Shown in pieces: positions 9,430 through 40,251 of a stretch of DNA of 64,000 nucleotides. The translations under genes and the position numbers were made by a program. Within the stretch, counting starts at the first letter, position 1; each line of letters starts with the position of its first letter. The notes under the pieces were generated by a model, which saw only the letters and a program-made list of their open reading frames with translations, had not been told where the DNA came from and made no database searches. The stretch is taken from positions 62,001 through 126,000 of IMG/VR virus record IMGVR_UViG_3300031951_021456. One strand, 5' to 3'.

Positions 9430-9795
9430 ATGAAAATCTCTACAACACATAAAAGATTTGCAGATCATTTAGATGACCAAATCGCTCTAGAATACCCTGC
9501 ACGTTTTCTAGGACCCAATTGGAAGAATGTATTGAACTTCTGGATCTATTTGGATACTTTGAGTGGTGAAGAATTTAGGTTAATTTTTGATCGTTATTGG
9601 GCTTTAGATGAAGATGCTAGAGTTTCTGCTATAAATAATGCTCATAAAGCGGCTGAAGCGACTATAGATATTCATTATACATATACAACTCGTGGTGCCG
9701 CCCTTACACTTGCACCTGCTTATGCATCCCTTGAACTCATTGGTTCTCATAAGCTAGAGTCTCTTAATTTTCTTCCTTTGTTTCTAAACCAGTGA
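9430..9795 (+). CDS. MKIS-family paralog 1
   Basis: MKISTTHKRFAD..LEYP.RFLGPNWKNVLNFWIYLDTL ... ELIGSHKLESL.FLPLFLN. Confidence 0.85.
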   Translation: MKISTTHKRFADHLDDQIALEYPARFLGPNWKNVLNFWIYLDTLSGEEFRLIFDRYWALDEDARVSAINNAHKAAEATIDIHYTYTTRGAALTLAPAYASLELIGSHKLESLNFLPLFLNQ

Positions 9796-10163
9796 AAATA
9801 TCTTCTTCTCATCAAAAATTTGCAGATCGGTTAAATAACCAAACTGCTCTAGAATACCCTGAACGTTTTCTGGGACCTAATTGGAAGGATGTATTGAATT
9901 TCTGGATTTATTTGGATACTTTGAGTCGTGAAGAGCTTGATAAAGTCTATGAGCATCATCGTGGTTTGAAAGACATACATATATCAAGGCGTCTTGCTTG
10001 GTGTGCTGCTAAGGATACTATAGGTTATGATTATACAAATGCAGCTGCATTTGCATATTATGTTAATTGTTATAATGCCGCTGGATGTCATGCAACCAGT
10101 GAACTCATTGGTTCTCATAAGCTTGAGACCTTGACGTTTTTTCCTTTGTTCATAAATTTTTAA
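9792..10163 (+). CDS. MKIS-family paralog 2
   Basis: Same terminal blocks; GTG start overlapping the paralog 1 stop. Confidence 0.85.
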   Translation: MKISSSHQKFADRLNNQTALEYPERFLGPNWKDVLNFWIYLDTLSREELDKVYEHHRGLKDIHISRRLAWCAAKDTIGYDYTNAAAFAYYVNCYNAAGCHATSELIGSHKLETLTFFPLFINF

Positions 10164-20080: not shown

Positions 20081-20437
20081 ATGAAAATCTCTACAACACA
20101 TAAAAGATTTGCAGATCGGTTAAGAGGCCAACCTGCCCTAAAATATCCTGAATATTTCTTAGGACCTAATTGGAAGGATGTATTGAATTTCTGGATTTAT
20201 TTGGATACTTTGAGTGATGATGATATTAGGTTAATTGATATGAGATATTTTGCTTTATGGGATTTAAATACCTTAAGGAATCTTGCTTGGAAAGCTGCTA
20301 AGGATACTATAGGTGTGTATTATGCAGAAGCATCTATTCTCACTCCTACATATGCTGGGACTTATGTAACCAGTGAACTTATTGGTTCTCATAAGCTTAA
20401 GTCTCTTAAGTTTCTCCCTTTGTTTTTAAACCTATGA
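20081..20437 (+). CDS. MKIS-family paralog 3
   Basis: Conserved terminal blocks. Confidence 0.85.
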   Translation: MKISTTHKRFADRLRGQPALKYPEYFLGPNWKDVLNFWIYLDTLSDDDIRLIDMRYFALWDLNTLRNLAWKAAKDTIGVYYAEASILTPTYAGTYVTSELIGSHKLKSLKFLPLFLNL

Positions 20438-20805
20438 AAATCTCTACAACACATAAAAAATTTGCAGATCGGTTATGGGACCAACCTGTTTTAGAATACC
20501 CTGAACGATTTCTAGGACCTAATTGGAAGAATGTATTGAACTTCTGGATTTATTTGGATACTTTGAGTGCTGAGGATACTGATATAATTCATATGCGCTA
20601 TTTGGTTTTAGGTGAAGATGCTATAGTTTATGCTGAAAACCATGATTGGAAAGCTGCTAGGGATACTATAGGTTTTACATATGCAGATGCAACTTGTCAT
20701 ATAACTTTTACATTTCCAAGCATTTATACAACTCTTGAACTCATTGGTTCTCATAATCTTGAGTATTTGACTTTTCTTCCATTGTTTTTAAAACATAAAA
20801 TTTAA
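20434..20805 (+). CDS. MKIS-family paralog 4
   Basis: Conserved terminal blocks; ATGA overlap with paralog 3. Confidence 0.85.
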   Translation: MKISTTHKKFADRLWDQPVLEYPERFLGPNWKNVLNFWIYLDTLSAEDTDIIHMRYLVLGEDAIVYAENHDWKAARDTIGFTYADATCHITFTFPSIYTTLELIGSHNLEYLTFLPLFLKHKI

Positions 20806-27673: not shown

Positions 27674-28042
27674 GTGAAAATCTCCACCACCCATCAAAAA
27701 TTTGCAGATCAGTTAGGCGACCAAACTGCTCTAGAATACCCTGAACGTTTTCTAGGACCTAATTGGAAGGATGTTTTGAACTTCTGGATTTATTTGGACA
27801 CTTTAAGCGCCGAAAAGCGTAAGATAGTTAGTAAGCGCTATAGTGCTTTAGCTGATACTTCAGTAATAAGTTTAACTCATGGTTCTCACTGGGTTCTTAC
27901 ATGGAATGCTGCTCAAGATATTATAGGTAATGAATGTGTATGGTCAGCTTTCCGGGTGATTGGGAGCAGTGTGAACATTGAACTCATCGCTTCACATAAA
28001 CTTGAGTCTCTTAAGTTTCTTCCCCTGTTTTTGAATTTATGA
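27674..28042 (+). CDS. MKIS-family paralog 7
   Basis: GTG start; conserved blocks. Confidence 0.85.
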   Translation: MKISTTHQKFADQLGDQTALEYPERFLGPNWKDVLNFWIYLDTLSAEKRKIVSKRYSALADTSVISLTHGSHWVLTWNAAQDIIGNECVWSAFRVIGSSVNIELIASHKLESLKFLPLFLNL

Positions 28043-28392
28043 AAATCTCTAGAACACATAAAAGATTTGCCGATCATTTAGATGACCAAACTGCTTTAGA
28101 ATACCCTGAACGATTTCTAGGACCCAATTGGAAAGATGTACTGAACTTTTGGATTTATTACGATACTTTGAGTGATGATGTTCTTAGGTTAATTATTAGG
28201 CGCCATCAGGCTATAGAGGATTTAAATTATGTAAAGAATCTTTCTTGGAATGCTGCTGAAAATACTATAGGTGAGTATTATACGCGGGTAGCTTATGATG
28301 TTACACATTCTCTTAGTTATTTAACCTGCGAACTCATTGGTTCACATAAGCTTGAGACTCTCAATTTTCTTCCTTTGTTTTTGAATTTATGA
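28039..28392 (+). CDS. MKIS-family paralog 8
   Basis: ATGA overlap; conserved blocks. Confidence 0.85.
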   Translation: MKISRTHKRFADHLDDQTALEYPERFLGPNWKDVLNFWIYYDTLSDDVLRLIIRRHQAIEDLNYVKNLSWNAAENTIGEYYTRVAYDVTHSLSYLTCELIGSHKLETLNFLPLFLNL

Positions 28393-30324: not shown

Positions 30325-30594
30325 ATGTCTTCTTTCTCTAACGCTCTTCAGCAACAAGATCCTTCTGCTGTTGTGTATCTGGATGTGAACGGTAACGTGA
30401 TCGCTCTGATGCCCAACGAATACGAGGGGAAAACCCTGACCCAACTTTTCACCGACTTTGGTTCCCGACTCGGCACTAACGTTTCCCGCGTTACAAGCTT
30501 CACTATCAATGGTCAACAAGTGGGCGCCACCGCCGTTGTCCGCCCAGGCGAAACCGTTCGCGGCAACGTTCAAACTGACAGCAAGCAAGCCTGA
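30325..30594 (+). CDS. Ubiquitin-like (beta-grasp) protein
   Basis: Beta-beta-alpha-beta-beta pattern (VVYLDV, VIAL, GKTLTQLFTDFGSRLG, SFTING, VVRPGETVR) with a free tail TDSKQA; first gene of a JAB-E2-E1 operon. Confidence 0.75.
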   Translation: MSSFSNALQQQDPSAVVYLDVNGNVIALMPNEYEGKTLTQLFTDFGSRLGTNVSRVTSFTINGQQVGATAVVRPGETVRGNVQTDSKQA

Positions 30595-30610
30595 TCATCC
30601 TTCAGATTAA

Positions 30611-31774
30611 TTGACCATGAGTCTACCTAGTTTCTGGGTAGACTCTATTTCTTTATCTTTTATTATGACATCTTCTAGATTCCTAAATCTTTATGCTAAT
30701 TATCATGGTGATCAAACCGTTCTTGAGAATCCTGAGCAAGTTCTAGGACCAAATTGTAAAAGTATTTTAGACTTTTGGGAGAGCCTAGATGAAAGTGTTC
30801 TTAGAACTGAATTTGATGGTTCATTTGAGATCTATTCCTGTCCATGGGGGAAATATCTTAGGCCTTGCCGGGATCCTCTAGCTAATTCAGTAATAACAAA
30901 AGAAAATTATGATAAGTTTGAAGTCGCAGAAAATGTCAATAAAATTCCATCAGATATTTGGACTGCATGGATTCTTCTCTGTTTTCATTTTGTGGATAAA
31001 GTTCCAACAAAAATGGAAGTTCTTGTTCGTTTCTTGAGAAATGAAGAAAATCCATCTCAATTTATGGCAGTCGTCCCTAAACAATCTGTTACAGGGGTAT
31101 CAGTAAAAGTTGGAAACTTTAATGATTGCTGTAACCTCTTAACTGGAGAAAAATACACATCATATCCACCAGAAGGTTGGATTCCATGTGGTTCTAGTCA
31201 TAGCCATAATACATTGTTTTCTGGCTGGAGTGATGAAGATAATAAATATGAAATTCCAGATCCAGGGATTCATATTACGGTTGGGGAAATCAACTCAACA
31301 AAACGAACATATCAAATTGCCGCTTCAGTGACAGGAAATTTGAAAAGATTCAAGATTAATTATACTCATCTCATTGATACAACATTTGATGAAGACTCTA
31401 AATTTCATAAAAATGTATTAGAATATGTTGAAATTAGTACAACAAAATATCAATCATGGCCTACGAATGTTAATTATAAACCCCTGCAGCGAAAACTTCC
31501 TCCAGCCAAAACAACTTTCAGCAATATTGAAGAATATCGTGAGTTTATGTATGGGGAATTCACTGATTTTGATGCCTATAAAAAAATTAGTAGAGATCCA
31601 TTTCATTATAGCGATTCGTTTAGATATGTAACTAATACATTAGAGGTTCATCAAATAGCTGATAGCATTGAAGATTTTATCAAAGAGAATCGCAATGATG
31701 CTGATCAACTAGAAGAGTTGCAAAATACTCTGTCTTCATGTCTTATTGATCTTCAACTTGAACTAAACTCATGA
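30611..31774 (+). CDS. JAB/JAMM/MPN+ metalloprotease (deubiquitinase-like) with N-terminal MKIS-family segment
   Basis: E136...H197-S-H199-x7-S207-x2-D210 (GSSHSHNTLFSGWSDED), VVPKQSV and PGIHITVG. Numbering is from the TTG at 30611; the true start may be ATG 30617 or 30665. Confidence 0.9.
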   Translation: MTMSLPSFWVDSISLSFIMTSSRFLNLYANYHGDQTVLENPEQVLGPNCKSILDFWESLDESVLRTEFDGSFEIYSCPWGKYLRPCRDPLANSVITKENYDKFEVAENVNKIPSDIWTAWILLCFHFVDKVPTKMEVLVRFLRNEENPSQFMAVVPKQSVTGVSVKVGNFNDCCNLLTGEKYTSYPPEGWIPCGSSHSHNTLFSGWSDEDNKYEIPDPGIHITVGEINSTKRTYQIAASVTGNLKRFKINYTHLIDTTFDEDSKFHKNVLEYVEISTTKYQSWPTNVNYKPLQRKLPPAKTTFSNIEEYREFMYGEFTDFDAYKKISRDPFHYSDSFRYVTNTLEVHQIADSIEDFIKENRNDADQLEELQNTLSSCLIDLQLELNS

Positions 31775-32592
31775 CATCCATTCTTTTTCCCGAAACGCTT
31801 CCTTCTGGGCTTGTTAATCTATTTCCACCAAAAATCAGTGCAATTTCATATAATTATTCTGGAGATGGATTGCTTTTAAGGGCTCATATGAAAGATAAAT
31901 TTAGACGTTTGCAACAAGATGGTGAATATGCTGCAAACTTTCTTATGTGTCCCATGATTTTTCAGCAAACTTTGGAAATTAATAACCCTGAAACTAGATT
32001 TCAAGTAAGAGAAACTCCCAGCCATTATCCAGAAACCAGAGTATATTTACAGGGAACAAAAATAGTAGATAATAATATTTTTACAACAGTAAAGGATAAT
32101 ATGTCAAATGTATGTGATAGCACTTTTTTAGTTTGCTGGGGTGGAAATTTTAATGTAAAGAGTATAAAAACAATGAAAGGATTTATTGATCTTTTCTTTA
32201 ATAGTTATTTTAATGGTGATTATACTTCACCAAAGGCATTAAGGACATCTGAAGAAAATTGTATTGAGATTAGAGGTGAAATTGCAGAAGATTCTTTTGA
32301 GGCCACTAATTATAAGCTCATTTCAAAGGATGCAAATGCAATCTATACTATTCATAGGCATGATAATCCTTCCATTTTCTTTTGGCTTAAATCTGCCGGA
32401 TTTAATCCAATTGTAGAAAATTCTGACATTATGTTAGTTCCACTTAAGAGTGTTATCCTAACGGATAATGGAATTGATTATCCTGGATTTGTAACACCTA
32501 TTGATCTTTGCCGTAAGAAATGGTTCATTCTCCCTGATGGGAAATTTGTTGGGCAGATGTCCAGTTCACAGACTGTCCGTAACCCCACGTAA
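31771..32592 (+). CDS. Prokaryotic E2 ubiquitin-conjugating-like enzyme (family D / PRTRC protein B-like)
   Basis: SNVCDSTFLVC122WGGN followed by LFFNSYFNGDY matches the N[VT]..[IV]CWG...FF.S.FN.D pattern; ATGA overlap with the JAB gene. Confidence 0.75.
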   Translation: MTSILFPETLPSGLVNLFPPKISAISYNYSGDGLLLRAHMKDKFRRLQQDGEYAANFLMCPMIFQQTLEINNPETRFQVRETPSHYPETRVYLQGTKIVDNNIFTTVKDNMSNVCDSTFLVCWGGNFNVKSIKTMKGFIDLFFNSYFNGDYTSPKALRTSEENCIEIRGEIAEDSFEATNYKLISKDANAIYTIHRHDNPSIFFWLKSAGFNPIVENSDIMLVPLKSVILTDNGIDYPGFVTPIDLCRKKWFILPDGKFVGQMSSSQTVRNPT

Positions 32593-32639: not shown

Positions 32640-33353
32640 ATGTTTGATAAAGTTTATCTGCTCGGAATTGGCGGGGGTGGAAGTCACCTTGCTCCAGTTC
32701 TCGTCCAAACTCTCCGCTCACACCCAAAAACTTCATATAGTACAATCACCTTTATTGATGGTGATAAATTTGAGAAAAAAAACCAGAGCCGACAGCTTAT
32801 GGAGCCTAGCGATGTTGGCCTTAACAAGGCTACTTCAGTTGCTAGAATCTGTGAAGATCGTGGATTTTCTGATGTATATTCAATTGAAGATTATGCAAAC
32901 TTTGAGAATCTAGTTCCACTTCTTGAAGATGCTCAGTCTCCACTTGTGATTGCATGTGTAGATAACAATGCAACCAGGGCAGCTATCATTGATGCGATCC
33001 AAAAAGTTTGCATTGATGATAACAAGAAGAACTTCTTCTTTATCACACCTGGTAATAGTGATGCGACCGAAGACCCTAAGGGTCAAGTTTGTTGGTGGGG
33101 GGCAATCAACGGGAAAACTTATGGTCAAAACCCCAAAGAATATGATCTAGACATTCAAAATCCTGATGATTTTATTCCAAGGATTGGTGGATGTATGGAT
33201 ATGAGCGAATCTCATCCACAAGTTCTTTCAGCAAATCATCTTGCGGTGTCTCTCACCCTTTCTCTCGTTCAAACACTGTTGGATGAGAAATTGGATCATC
33301 GTAAGTCTCAAATTCGCTTCAACTGCTACAATCTTACCACTGCCATTTCCTGA
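32640..33353 (+). CDS. E1/ThiF-family adenylating enzyme
   Basis: LLGIGGGGS (GxGxxG), IDGDKFEKKNQSRQ, GLNKA, ACVDN, PGN..GQV and candidate catalytic C185 (GGCMDMSESHPQ..AN). Confidence 0.92.
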   Translation: MFDKVYLLGIGGGGSHLAPVLVQTLRSHPKTSYSTITFIDGDKFEKKNQSRQLMEPSDVGLNKATSVARICEDRGFSDVYSIEDYANFENLVPLLEDAQSPLVIACVDNNATRAAIIDAIQKVCIDDNKKNFFFITPGNSDATEDPKGQVCWWGAINGKTYGQNPKEYDLDIQNPDDFIPRIGGCMDMSESHPQVLSANHLAVSLTLSLVQTLLDEKLDHRKSQIRFNCYNLTTAIS

Positions 33354-33358
33354 AAATC

Positions 33359-33829
33359 ATGTCTGACAATCCTCAAAACGTTAAAGTCAATGCAAGAGTT
33401 CTTAAATTTGATCAACTTCTTCAAGGCATTGAAGAATACGCAAGTTCAATCCGTACTCGTACAGATTCTGCTCTGAGCGAGGATAACATCTGCTCCCGTA
33501 TTGAAGAGATCTTTGGGGAAGAAGAATCTTTCAATAGGCTAGTTGCAGCTATTGTTACTCGTATTGGCATTAATAGCATCGTTAATGGTGTTGTTCGCCA
33601 AACGCAAGGAGACATTAACGAGAAGATTGATGCTACCATTAGCTCAAAACTCTCAGAAGAACCCCTACTTTCCACTGTAAATAGGCTCATTCAAATGCAC
33701 GCCAATGGTCAGGAAATTTCAATTCCTGATATCAATCAAAATCGCAAAATTGAAGACATTCCATTGGATAGTCCAGAAAATATTGCAGAGGTCTGTAGGC
33801 TTCTAGCTGGGGCTGACGCAATTCTCTGA
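33359..33829 (+). CDS. Alpha-helical hypothetical protein, last gene of the Ubl operon
   Basis: Starts 5 nt after the E1 stop and ends just before the terminator. Confidence 0.7.
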   Translation: MSDNPQNVKVNARVLKFDQLLQGIEEYASSIRTRTDSALSEDNICSRIEEIFGEEESFNRLVAAIVTRIGINSIVNGVVRQTQGDINEKIDATISSKLSEEPLLSTVNRLIQMHANGQEISIPDINQNRKIEDIPLDSPENIAEVCRLLAGADAIL

Positions 33830-33874: not shown

Positions 33875-34255
33875 ATGAAAATCTCCATTTCACATCAACA
33901 TTTTGCAAATTGGTTAAAGGCTCAAGATGCTCTAACTAATCCAGAAAAATATCTTGGCCCCAAATGGAAAGATGTCCTGAACTTTTGGATTTATTTGGAT
34001 TCAGAAGAGTCTGAGTGGGATGAGCGGCGTTGCACCGCTACTCTGCGTGCCGCTTATAATATTATAGGCTCTGAGTGGGATGAGCGGCGTTGCATCGCTA
34101 CTCTGCGTGCCGCTTATAATATTATAGGCTCTGAGTATGGATATGCAGCTTTTAATGCTCATGTTGGTTATGCTGAAGGGCATGCAACCTGTGAACTTAT
34201 CGCTTCACATAAACTTGAGTCTCTCAGTTTTCTTCCCCTGTTCTTGACCCCATGA
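33875..34255 (+). CDS. MKIS-family paralog 9 with internal 20-aa duplication
   Basis: ATG 33875; SEWDERRC(T/I)ATLRAAYNIIG twice; stop codon inside the dyad at 34252. Confidence 0.85.
   Translation: MKISISHQHFANWLKAQDALTNPEKYLGPKWKDVLNFWIYLDSEESEWDERRCTATLRAAYNIIGSEWDERRCIATLRAAYNIIGSEYGYAAFNAHVGYAEGHATCELIASHKLESLSFLPLFLTP
34010..34136. repeat. 60-bp tandem duplication (1 mismatch) plus 7-bp partial third copy
   Basis: 34010-34069 versus 34070-34129. Confidence 0.95.
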
Positions 34256-37389: not shown

Positions 37390-37464
37390 GAACTCCTTAT
37401 CATTCAAAGCTTGACAAACCATAATCTTACCACTATCATTAAAAGATCTTCAACACTTGAACTG

Positions 37465-38040
37465 ATGAATCTCAATCAAGCTGCTCAAAACATGGTTTCT
37501 TTCTGGGAAGATCCAAGGAACATTCCATTCAAGGGCCAATTAATCTCTTTAGATGGCGATACACCATGCATGTGTGCACAAGGCCAAACCCTCTTTAAAG
37601 AGGGCGATTATTCGGTTAATCAGCTAGAGATGATGCCTCAAGAAGTAGCAGATAAAGAAACTGCACGAATCTTAGGAATCTCAGTTTCTCATTCTAGGCT
37701 CTTGCGTAGAATTAATGATTCTTGTCCAGATGCTCCACAAGATGTTCTAACTAATCCAGAAAAATATCTAGGGCATAATTATGAAGCTGTACTGAAATTT
37801 TGGTATCTTTTGGATACTTTGAGTCGTGAAGATTTTGATATAGTTGATAAGCGTTGTTATGATATAGTTTCTGCTTTCTCAGCAGCTTATGCTATTATAG
37901 GCTCTGAGTATGCAAATGCAGCTTTTGATGCTGCCATTGGTCTTGTTGCAGGTTATGCAACTCTTGAACTCATCGGCTCACATAAACTTCAAGAACATGT
38001 TTTTCTTCCTATGTTCTCTTTTACTCAACTTCAGCCATGA
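37465..38040 (+). CDS. MKIS-family paralog 11 with N-terminal CMCAQGQ domain
   Basis: ATG 37465; DVLTNPEKYLG.NYEAVLKFW.LLDTL...ELIGSHKL. Confidence 0.85.
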   Translation: MNLNQAAQNMVSFWEDPRNIPFKGQLISLDGDTPCMCAQGQTLFKEGDYSVNQLEMMPQEVADKETARILGISVSHSRLLRRINDSCPDAPQDVLTNPEKYLGHNYEAVLKFWYLLDTLSREDFDIVDKRCYDIVSAFSAAYAIIGSEYANAAFDAAIGLVAGYATLELIGSHKLQEHVFLPMFSFTQLQP

Positions 38041-39654: not shown

Positions 39655-40251
39655 ATGAATCTCAATCAAGCGGCCCAAAACATGGTTTCCTTCTGGGAGG
39701 ATCCGAGAAACATTCCATTTAAGTGCAAATTAATATCTTTTACTGATAGTGGTAAACCTTGCATGTGTGCACAAGGACAAACACTCTTTAAAGAAGGTGG
39801 GTATTCTGTGGATCAGCTAAAGGAGATGCCTCAAGAAGTAGCAGATAAAGAAACTGCACGAATCTTAGGAATCTCAGTTTCTCATTCTTGGCTCTTGCGG
39901 CATATCAACGATTCTAGACTAGGTGCTCCGCAAGATGTTCTAACTAATCCAGAAAAATATCTTGGTCCCAATTGGGAAGCTGTACTGAAATTTTGGCATC
40001 TTTTGGATACTTTGAGTATGGACGAACTTAAGTGGGAAAAAGTTGGAATCCGCTTTTGTGCTTTAGATGAGTTTTATAGATGTTATTCTGAGAATGCAGT
40101 TTTAAAAGCTGCTGAAGATAATATAGAGATTTTCCATGCAAAAAACGTTTTCAATGATTGTTGTCGTGGTGTAGGTTTGGCAACCCTTGAAATCATTGGG
40201 TCTCATAAACTTCAAGAACATGTTTTTCTTCCTATGTTCTCCAACCTTTGA
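39655..40251 (+). CDS. MKIS-family paralog 13 with N-terminal CMCAQGQ domain
   Basis: Close copy of the 37465 gene at both ends, different in the middle of the family domain. Confidence 0.85.
   Translation: MNLNQAAQNMVSFWEDPRNIPFKCKLISFTDSGKPCMCAQGQTLFKEGGYSVDQLKEMPQEVADKETARILGISVSHSWLLRHINDSRLGAPQDVLTNPEKYLGPNWEAVLKFWHLLDTLSMDELKWEKVGIRFCALDEFYRCYSENAVLKAAEDNIEIFHAKNVFNDCCRGVGLATLEIIGSHKLQEHVFLPMFSNL

What the first reader, a model, noticed from the sequence alone, without database searches (positions are those of the whole stretch)
30707..30790. JAB protease carries the conserved block of the expanded paralog family
Seen: GDQTVLENPEQVLGPNCKSILDFWESLD versus GDQTALEYPERFLGPNWKDVLNFWIYLD (paralog 7), 18 of 28 identical by eye. 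The family C-block is absent. Inference: a physical link between the Ubl cycle and the 13 paralogs, such as a shared docking module on the E1/E2 or on a common target. The alternative is a passive recombination scar.
Basis: partly seen in the sequence, partly recalled or inferred. Interest (0 to 1): 0.72.

Follow-up and report, generated by a model that had tools for sequence, protein, structure and literature searches.

The report
Paralog-derived N-terminal patch on phage JAB protease
The phage's JAB deubiquitinase-like protease does begin with about 43 residues copied from a 40-copy phage gene family, but related phages lack this piece, so it is more likely a tolerated recombination patch than a proven link between the two systems.

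Summary
Residues 15-42 of the JAB protein (30707-30790) match the paralog N-block 18/28, and the match runs without gaps from Met1 (ATG 30665) to about residue 43. A family profile finds it at E 1.5e-8 among all genome ORFs. The C-block is absent.

The window holds 13 family ORFs. The whole 248-kb freshwater T4-like cyanophage genome holds 40.

The protein is a JAB: its model has the MPN fold, and E118, H179, H181, S189 and D192 are conserved. The block must be translated, because no in-frame start exists before residue 110.

The evidence leans against a functional link:
- Only one of 76 JAB homologue clusters (91% identical) has the block.
- None of the 23 related viral loci has it, including a 243-kb phage that carries about 30 paralog matches.
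- Four other large phage records have the Ubl-JAB-E2-E1 cassette and no paralogs.
- Homologues carry a short acidic tail in place of the block.
- Seven conserved hydrophobic family positions are replaced in JAB.
- One natural variant deletes the GPNC core in frame.

A complex prediction gave no answer.

Best reading: an in-frame recombination patch in a tolerant N-terminal tail. A docking function is not excluded.

The parts
30325..30594 (+). Ubl-like gene (89 aa), first gene of the cassette
   Evidence: It is conserved upstream of the JAB in 20+ loci. One orthologue each hits ThiS (E 0.006) and Ub-Mut7C (E 0.004). Orthologues end in ...SESKG plus 0-3 residues, whereas the window and L001 end in ...DSKQA. 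GC is 0.52 against 0.33 for the genome.
30619..30645 (+). Terminator-like hairpin (12-bp stem) with a T-rich tail, between the Ubl stop and the JAB start
   Evidence: Found by the scan. The same layout (hairpin, T-run, then ATGAC) lies before the JAB in L002, L019, L010, L013 and L015. The JAB start context is therefore native and was not imported with the block.
30665..31774 (+). JAB/JAMM protease gene (369 aa from ATG 30665)
   Evidence: ATG 30665 is conserved in L001, while the upstream ATG 30617 is AAG there. The gene caller on L001 uses the same start. The AF2 model has the MPN fold, with Foldseek probability 1.0 to PfJAMM1, to a bacterial Ubl-deubiquitinase complex (8tyx_B), to Cap3 and to an Rpn8/Rpn11 complex (5u4p_B).
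30665..30793 (+). Paralog-derived N-block, residues 1-43
   Evidence: Shown. It keeps S4, L20, P23, L27, G28, P29, N30, L35, F37, W38, L41 and D42. It replaces family positions 7, 10, 14, 26, 31, 39 and 40, mostly hydrophobic or aromatic, with residues seen in at most 7 of about 230 family sequences.
30707..30790 (+).
   Evidence: It is 18/28 identical to the paralog at 27674-28042.
30746..30757 (+). Twelve bases (codons G28-P29-N30-C31) deleted in frame in a natural variant
   Evidence: In read-laying run X7, a 1,091-nt contig spans 30344-31446 and is the only form in that run. It lists no other difference before 31098.
30794..31774 (+). Conserved JAB family body: N-terminal beta region, MPN core and C-terminal helical hairpin
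   Evidence: Homology to 75 clusters starts at residue 41-46. pLDDT is mostly above 80 for residues 45-260 and 330-369.
31016..31018 (+). Codon of E118, the invariant upstream Glu of the JAMM site
   Evidence: Invariant column in A4.
31199..31240 (+). JAMM motif H179-x-H181-x7-S189-x2-D192
   Evidence: Read directly from the sequence. These are invariant columns in the 66-sequence alignment A4.
31771..32592 (+). E2-like protein (273 aa)
   Evidence: It is conserved after the JAB in 20 loci. N113, C122 and W123 are invariant. One orthologue hits Prok-E2_D at E 0.003. There is no PDB sequence hit. The assignment is weak.
32640..33353 (+). E1-like ThiF-family adenylating enzyme (237 aa)
   Evidence: Pfam ThiF E 1.4e-11 and PADLOC BilD E 5.8e-7. 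The G-x-G-G-x-G motif and C185 are invariant.
33359..33829 (+). Fifth cassette gene (156 aa), function unknown
   Evidence: Orthologues follow E1 in L019, L002, L003 and L004-L007/L012.
27674..28392 (+). Two tandem paralogs (27674-28042 and 28039-28392) about 2.3 kb upstream of the cassette
33875..34255 (+). Paralog directly downstream of the cassette
   Evidence: L002 and L019 also have paralog arrays directly downstream of the cassette.

Best explanation
The block is a lineage-specific, in-frame patch of about 40 codons. It was copied from the 5' end of a member of the phage's large helical-protein family into the JAB gene.

The patch lies just after the native start (ATG-ACA). It replaces the short, acidic, variable tail that precedes the JAB body in all other orthologues. 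The likely mechanism is illegitimate or short-homology recombination, or template switching. This is inferred, in a genome where paralog arrays flank the cassette.

The patch is necessarily translated. It sits outside the catalytic MPN core and lacks helices 3-6 and the C-block, which complete the six-helix bundle in real family members. It has also lost seven conserved positions, mostly hydrophobic or aromatic. It therefore cannot fold as the family does.

Most likely it is a tolerated appendage on a permissive N-terminus and does not couple the Ubl cycle to the paralogs.

Shown: the homology, the obligatory translation, the absence from orthologues and the native start context. Inferred: the recombination mechanism and the lack of function.
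For: - The homology is significant.
- There is no in-frame ATG, GTG or TTG between 30665 and residue 110, and the family's conserved body starts at residue 44.
- 75 of 76 homologue clusters lack the block. They carry tails of 0-67 residues, mostly short or rich in T, E and Q.
- All 23 IMG/VR cassette loci lack it.
- G003 (243 kb) has about 30 family matches, on both sides of the cassette, yet its JAB has no block.
- G001, G002, G004 and G005 have the cassette and no family member.
- The hairpin, T-run and ATGAC start context is shared with loci that lack the block.
- The residues at block positions 7, 10, 14, 26, 31, 39 and 40 are seen in 0-7 of about 230 family sequences.
- The AF2 pLDDT of the block is 39-66 and no packing is predicted. 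In the paralog the same segment is part of a bundle with pLDDT 95.
- A natural variant deletes GPNC in frame.
- A profile search of 1.84 billion representatives found no other fusion of the block to a foreign domain among the 150 hits listed, of 300 in all.
Against: - The block keeps 12 of the family's conserved positions.
- Its synonymous sites are as scrambled as chance. Third-codon identity at identical residues is 0.456, against 0.675 among paralogs. This could mean long retention under purifying selection. It could equally mean that the donor was an already divergent paralog.
- The block is kept in two lineages about 6% apart in DNA and in several freshwater samples.
- An in-frame patch with two junctions is less likely by accident than a simple 5' replacement.
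- The deletion variant rests on one assembled contig from one sample.
- AF2 confidence for the block is limited by an alignment only two sequences deep.
Confidence: 0.5

Rival explanations
1. Functional docking or tethering module. The retained helix-turn-helix of the N-block binds the same partner as the paralogs' conserved N-terminal face. That partner could be E1/E2, a paralog or a common host target, and binding would recruit the deubiquitinase to it.
For: Family-invariant residues (S4, L20, P23, LGPN, L35, F37, W38, L41, D42) are retained although synonymous sites are saturated. The block is conserved between the window and L001, with 1 change in codons 15-43. Other JAMM enzymes use non-catalytic extensions for recruitment (general knowledge of Rpn11, CSN5 and BRCC36). 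In the same lineage the Ubl C-terminus also changed, from G to QA, which hints at co-ordinated remodelling of the cassette.
Against: The block is absent from every other orthologue, including the genome with 30 paralog matches. The cassette exists without paralogs in four large records. The bundle-core residues are lost and the rest of the fold is missing. There is a natural GPNC deletion. The low divergence in codons 15-43 is not exceptional, because many 100-nt windows show 0-2 differences. The complex prediction for E1+E2+paralog scored 0.00, which is neither support nor evidence against.
Confidence: 0.25
2. Cis-acting role on the JAB itself. The helical N-terminus would pack on the C-terminal helical hairpin or over the active site. 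It would then change oligomerisation, stability or auto-inhibition without involving the paralogs.
For: The model has a confident C-terminal helical hairpin at residues 328-368 that could pair with added helices. The hydrophobic-to-polar changes in the block are compatible with adaptation to a new structural setting.
Against: AF2 does not pack the block on anything, with pLDDT 39-66. The first 14 codons diverge fast between the window and L001, with 10 of 42 nt different. There is a natural GPNC deletion.
Confidence: 0.12
3. N-terminal sorting signal, for example a T4-type capsid-targeting sequence shared by the paralogs and the JAB. Both would then be packaged and injected.
For: The block sits at the extreme N-terminus in nearly all family members. 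T4-like phages use conserved N-terminal targeting peptides on otherwise polymorphic internal proteins (my own knowledge, not tested here).
Against: In the paralogs the block is an integral part of a folded bundle and is not a free peptide. No (L/I)-x-E cleavage motif is evident. The late-promoter motif TATAAATA is not enriched in the window, with 6 found against 7.3 expected. The region looks like an early-gene region.
Confidence: 0.05
4. Chance resemblance, or a mis-called start.
For: None beyond the short length of the block.
Against: E 1.5e-8 against genome ORFs. The alignment runs without gaps from Met1. No downstream start codon exists. The ATG is conserved in L001.
Confidence: 0.01

Closest known systems
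Prokaryotic JAB/JAMM deubiquitinases of Ubl operons (BilC of Bil systems, Cap3 of type II CBASS, archaeal JAMM1)
   Same: It has the MPN fold and a complete E...HxHx7Sx2D site. It is encoded next to a small Ubl-like protein, an E2-like protein and a ThiF-type E1.
   Different: It is encoded by T4-like cyanophage genomes and not by bacterial defence islands. Gene order is Ubl-JAB-E2-E1-X. No PADLOC model matches the JAB, E2 or Ubl. It is larger (369 aa), with an N-terminal beta region and a C-terminal helical hairpin. Only this lineage carries the paralog-derived N-block.
Eukaryotic JAMM enzymes with non-catalytic recruiting extensions (Rpn11, CSN5, BRCC36)
   Same: A catalytic MPN core with helical extensions. 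Foldseek hits have E 4e-5 to 1e-3.
   Different: In those enzymes the extensions are conserved and build defined complexes. Here the N-block is absent from nearly all orthologues.
The window's own 40-copy family (about 120 aa, N-block ...LGPNWKDVLNFWIYLD..., C-block ...ELIGSHKLESLxFLPLFLN)
   Same: Residues 1-43 of the JAB align with the family N-block from Met1.
   Different: The JAB has none of helices 3-6 and no C-block. Seven conserved core positions are replaced. The family has no Pfam, PHROG or PADLOC match and no fold match.
Polymorphic genes of T4-like hyperplastic regions that share a conserved N-terminal segment (T4 internal proteins with a capsid-targeting sequence)
   Same: A conserved N-terminus on variable small proteins in a T4-like phage (analogy from my own knowledge).
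   Different: The block here is 45 residues of a folded bundle. There is no cleavage motif and no sign of late expression.

Membership tests
JAB/JAMM (MPN+) metalloprotease | MPN fold | tested here: met
   The AF2 model has pLDDT 80 overall and mostly above 80 in the core. Foldseek gives probability 1.0 to PfJAMM1 (5ld9/5lda), to a bacterial Ubl-deubiquitinase complex (8tyx_B), to Cap3 (9ild) and to an Rpn8/Rpn11 complex (5u4p_B).
JAB/JAMM (MPN+) metalloprotease | Catalytic motif E...H-x-H-x7-S-x2-D | tested here: met
   E118, H179, H181, S189 and D192 are present and invariant in 66 sequences. The motif reads HSHNTLFSGWSDED in the ORF.
JAB/JAMM (MPN+) metalloprotease | Zn-dependent (iso)peptidase activity on a Ubl C-terminus | not testable with these tools
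   Needs biochemistry.
Window's 40-copy helical family | N-block (profile positions about 9-51) | tested here: met
   hmmsearch E 2.6e-9 and 1.5e-8. The alignment has no gaps.
Window's 40-copy helical family | Conserved hydrophobic or aromatic positions of the block (7, 10, 14, 26, 31, 39, 40) | tested here: not met
   The JAB residues L, Y, H, V, C, E and S occur in 0-7 of about 230 family sequences at these positions.
Window's 40-copy helical family | Variable helices 3-5 plus the C-block, forming a six-helix bundle of about 120 aa | tested here: not met
   The profile match ends at position 51 of 127. The JAB continues directly into the conserved beta region of JAB orthologues. The JAB is not a family member. 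It carries a fragment.
Bil (bacterial ISG15-like) Ubl conjugation system | Ubl + E1 + E2 + JAB encoded together | tested here: inconclusive
   E1 is solid and so is the JAB. The E2 and Ubl rest on weak single-orthologue Pfam hits and conserved Cys/Gly positions.
Bil (bacterial ISG15-like) Ubl conjugation system | Sequence membership by PADLOC Bil models | tested here: not met
   Only E1 matches BilD, and weakly (E 5.8e-7). The JAB, E2 and Ubl have no match.
Bil (bacterial ISG15-like) Ubl conjugation system | Ubl with a C-terminal Gly, exposed or followed by a few residues | tested here: not met
   Orthologues end ...KG plus 0-3 residues. The window and L001 end ...KQA.
Bil (bacterial ISG15-like) Ubl conjugation system | Bacterial anti-phage defence function | not testable with these tools
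   Here the cassette lies in phage genomes: G000 is a virus record, as are the IMG/VR records.
T4-type capsid-targeting sequence | Short N-terminal peptide ending in an (L/I)-x-E prohead-protease site, with late expression | tested here: inconclusive
   No such motif is seen by eye. The late-promoter motif is not enriched. No proteomics is available.

The most novel reading that the evidence does not exclude
The conserved N-terminal face of the 40-copy family is a handle for one common partner. That partner could be a host factor or the phage's own Ubl machinery, and the family's common Lys32 could serve as an acceptor. In this lineage the deubiquitinase would have borrowed the handle so that it is delivered to the same partner. 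That would wire a phage-encoded ubiquitin-like cycle to a diversifying effector family.
Probability: 0.15. Interest if true: 0.7.

Novelty: new variant of a known kind. Interest (0 to 1): 0.3.

Why it matters
If the block were functional, it would be a rare case of a viral deubiquitinase retargeted by a module taken from an expanding effector family. It would also give a handle on two unknowns at once: the phage-encoded Ubl cassette and the 40-copy family.

As the evidence stands, it mainly documents in-frame module capture in the plastic early region of a T4-like cyanophage. It also shows that the N-terminus of this JAB family tolerates replacement.

The surrounding context may be worth more than the block. 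There is a conserved five-gene Ubl-JAB-E2-E1-X cassette in many large cyanophage genomes. There is also a helical family with no known fold relative that reaches 30-40 copies per genome.

Tried and rejected
- GenBank phages. The 10-kb region (megablast) and the JAB protein (tblastn) found nothing. Only the tail-fibre ORF placed the genome among T4-like cyanophages.
- Family libraries. Pfam, PHROGs and PADLOC gave nothing for the paralogs.
- Fold searches with the paralog model. PDB, AFDB clusters, BFVD and the wide VIA search gave nothing significant. The best Z was 3.6, with scattered weak hits to DED, PYD and CARD six-helix domains. The ESM Atlas feature hits were all under 0.7.
- Alignment A3. 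Paralog N-block fragments added to the JAB alignment were misplaced by MAFFT, so A3 was dropped.
- Whole-record search of L004. The record is not held.
- Window versus L001 divergence as a test of selection on the block. Divergence is patchy, from 0 to 23 differences per 100 nt. One change in codons 15-43 is therefore not informative.
- Synonymous-site saturation as proof of selection. Rejected as decisive, because divergent paralog pairs are almost as saturated (0.537) and the donor may already have been divergent.
- A closer donor paralog. None was found among 248 family sequences, where the best identity is about 57-61%.
- 'The block supplies the start codon'. Rejected, because the start context is native.
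- Complex prediction of E1+E2+paralog. No answer.
- Literature. Searches for a cyanophage Ubl/JAB/E1 system found nothing specific.
- A possible 3' junction microhomology. GTTCTTAG is shared with the paralog at 28039, but offset by 3 codons. It was noted and is too weak to claim.

Full report
**What is there**

The window is bases 62001-126000 of a 247,932-bp genome with 33% GC. The genome is held as a virus record. Its tail-fibre ORF places it among T4-like cyanophages. The sequencing runs that hold it are freshwater metagenomes.

Around the finding lies a co-directional cassette:
- a small Ubl-like gene (30325-30594);
- a 387-codon open frame, of which 369 codons from ATG 30665 are the JAB gene (to 31774);
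- an E2-like gene (31771-32592);
- a ThiF-type E1 (32640-33353; Pfam E 1.4e-11; PADLOC BilD E 5.8e-7);
- a fifth conserved gene (33359-33829).

The same five genes in the same order occur on an ENA contig (L001), on JGI and ENA contigs (L002-L004) and on IMG/VR viral contigs.

The quoted peptide is codons 15-42 (30707-30790). It matches the paralog at 27674-28042 at 18 of 28 positions. A profile of eight paralogs finds the JAB ORF at E 2.6e-9 among window ORFs and E 1.5e-8 among all 1,917 genome ORFs. The match covers only profile positions 9-51 of 127, so the C-block is absent.

The alignment runs without gaps from Met1 to about residue 43. The window has 13 family ORFs and the genome has 40.

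**The protein is a JAB**

No Pfam model reaches it directly, but several homologues carry PF14464 (Prok-JAB). An AF2 model built on 66 homologues has an MPN core. Foldseek gives probability 1.0 to archaeal JAMM1, to a bacterial Ubl-deubiquitinase complex (8tyx_B), to Cap3 and to an Rpn8/Rpn11 complex (5u4p_B). E118, H179, H181, S189 and D192 are invariant.

**The block must be translated**

- ATG 30665 is conserved in L001, and the gene caller used it there.
- The upstream ATG 30617 is AAG in L001. It and TTG 30611 run into a terminator-like hairpin with a 12-bp stem at 30619-30645.
- The next in-frame ATG, GTG or TTG after 30665 is at residue 110, inside the conserved body.

**Homologues do not keep the block**

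Seventy-six homologue clusters were found. In 75 of them, similarity to the window's JAB starts at residue 41-46, at a motif of the form (S/T)-I-L-R-T. Before that they carry tails of 0-67 residues, mostly short or rich in T, E and Q.

Only P0001, which is 91% identical and lies on the syntenic contig L001, has the block (E 2.4e-12 with an N-block profile). None of the 23 IMG/VR loci has it in the JAB.

**The cassette and the family are separable**

Five large viral records carrying the cassette were searched. Four of them (258 kb, 284 kb, 161 kb and 370 kb) have no family member.

The fifth, G003 (243 kb), has the closest block-less JAB at 52% identity. It has about 30 family matches, some directly on both sides of the cassette, yet its JAB lacks the block. 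L002 likewise has five paralogs directly after the cassette and a JAB without the block.

The fusion therefore arose once, in the window/L001 lineage, in a setting where paralogs flank the cassette.

**How the patch sits**

The layout between the Ubl stop and the JAB start is the same in loci with and without the block: a hairpin, a T-run and then ATGAC. The start context is therefore native. The foreign piece is an in-frame patch from about codon 3 to codon 43, and it replaced the variable tail. The block did not bring in the promoter or the start codon.

**What the family is**

The family is found in 300 clusters at 50% identity among 1.84 billion representatives. Nearly all are 115-140 aa with the block at residues 1-45. 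No other fusion to a foreign domain appears among the 150 hits listed.

AF2 gives a very confident six-helix bundle (pLDDT 94.7). The N-block forms helices 1-2 and the C-block forms the end of helix 5 plus the tail. No fold or sequence relative of known function was found.

The N-block is thus about 40% of a single compact domain and is not a module that folds by itself.

**Signs of decay or re-purposing in the JAB copy**

Against about 230 family sequences, the JAB keeps S4, L20, P23, L27, G28, P29, N30, L35, F37, W38, L41 and D42.

At positions 7, 10, 14, 26, 31, 39 and 40 the family has H, F, L, F/Y, W/Y, I/L and Y/F. The JAB has L, Y, H, V, C, E and S, each seen in 0-7 family sequences. 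In the JAB model the block has pLDDT 39-66 and packs on nothing. The alignment there is only two sequences deep, which limits this result.

In freshwater run X7, the only contig covering the region carries a 12-nt in-frame deletion at 30746-30757. It removes G28-P29-N30-C31, the most conserved part of the block. No other difference is listed from 30344 to 31097. This is one contig from one sample.

**Is the block under selection?**

This is not settled. Third-codon identity at identical residues is 0.456 between the JAB and the paralogs. It is 0.675 among paralogs overall and 0.537 among the most divergent paralog pairs.

The block is therefore not a recent conversion from any present paralog, and no closer donor exists among 248 family sequences. 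Long retention under constraint would explain this. So would capture from an already divergent paralog.

Between the window and L001, codons 15-43 differ at 1 of 87 nt and codons 1-14 at 10 of 42 nt. Divergence along the region is patchy, so neither figure is decisive.

**Direct test of docking**

A complex prediction of E1, E2-like and a paralog scored 0.00. The tool states that this is neither support nor evidence against.

**Verdict**

The block is real and homologous. The most economical reading is a tolerated, lineage-specific recombination patch in a permissive N-terminal tail (confidence about 0.5).

A docking or recruiting role has a confidence of about 0.25. A role in cis on the JAB itself has about 0.12. 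Neither is excluded, and both need experiments.

The first half is met. The second half is suggested by the block-less orthologues and by the deletion variant.

Noticed in passing
window 30325-30594; L001 9661-9930; L002 1740-2015; L004 9671-9937: The Ubl-like gene has 51-54% GC in genomes or loci of 33-39% GC. The anomaly is conserved across distant orthologues and is unexplained.
   Followed up: partly
window 30577-30594 (end of the Ubl gene): Orthologous Ubls end in ...SESKG plus 0-3 residues. The window and L001 end in ...DSKQA, so the usual terminal Gly is replaced. This is the same lineage that gained the JAB N-block.
   Followed up: partly
window 30746-30757: The natural variant in run X7 deletes exactly codons G-P-N-C of the block, in frame.
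   Followed up: partly
whole genome G000 (e.g. window 9430-10163, 20081-20805, 27674-28392): There are 40 family ORFs in 248 kb, often in tandem arrays whose stop region overlaps the next start. The N- and C-blocks are highly conserved and the middle is variable. The fold is a confident six-helix bundle with no known relative. Weak structural echoes of DED, PYD and CARD death-fold domains (Z 2-3) and Atlas feature hits to NACHT/STAND-associated helical domains (scores under 0.7) are leads only.
   Followed up: partly
window 37411-38040 and 39655-40251: Two family members carry a shared N-terminal extension of 70-90 residues with a Cys-rich motif. The family therefore does take part in domain shuffling in this genome.
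   Followed up: no
window 33875-34255: The paralog directly after the cassette contains an internal tandem duplication of about 20 residues (SEWDERRC.ATLRAAYNIIG, twice).
   Followed up: no
window 30665-30706 versus L001 10001-10042: The first 14 codons of the JAB differ at 10 of 42 nt between two genomes that are otherwise about 6% apart. This is a local hot spot, either a recombination mosaic or fast evolution.
   Followed up: partly
window 33359-33829: A fifth gene of unknown function is conserved after E1 in several of the cassette loci (L019, L002/L003, L004-L007/L012). It may be a further component or a target.
   Followed up: no
P0158 (134 aa, 8-kb contig; near copy of a genome paralog): A family N-block breaks off after ...FLGPN and continues as unrelated sequence. 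This may be another chimera or a frameshift.
   Followed up: no
P0070 (615 aa, Logan contig): A JAB homologue cluster whose precomputed Pfam annotation is ThiF. This suggests a JAB-E1 fusion in some relatives.
   Followed up: no
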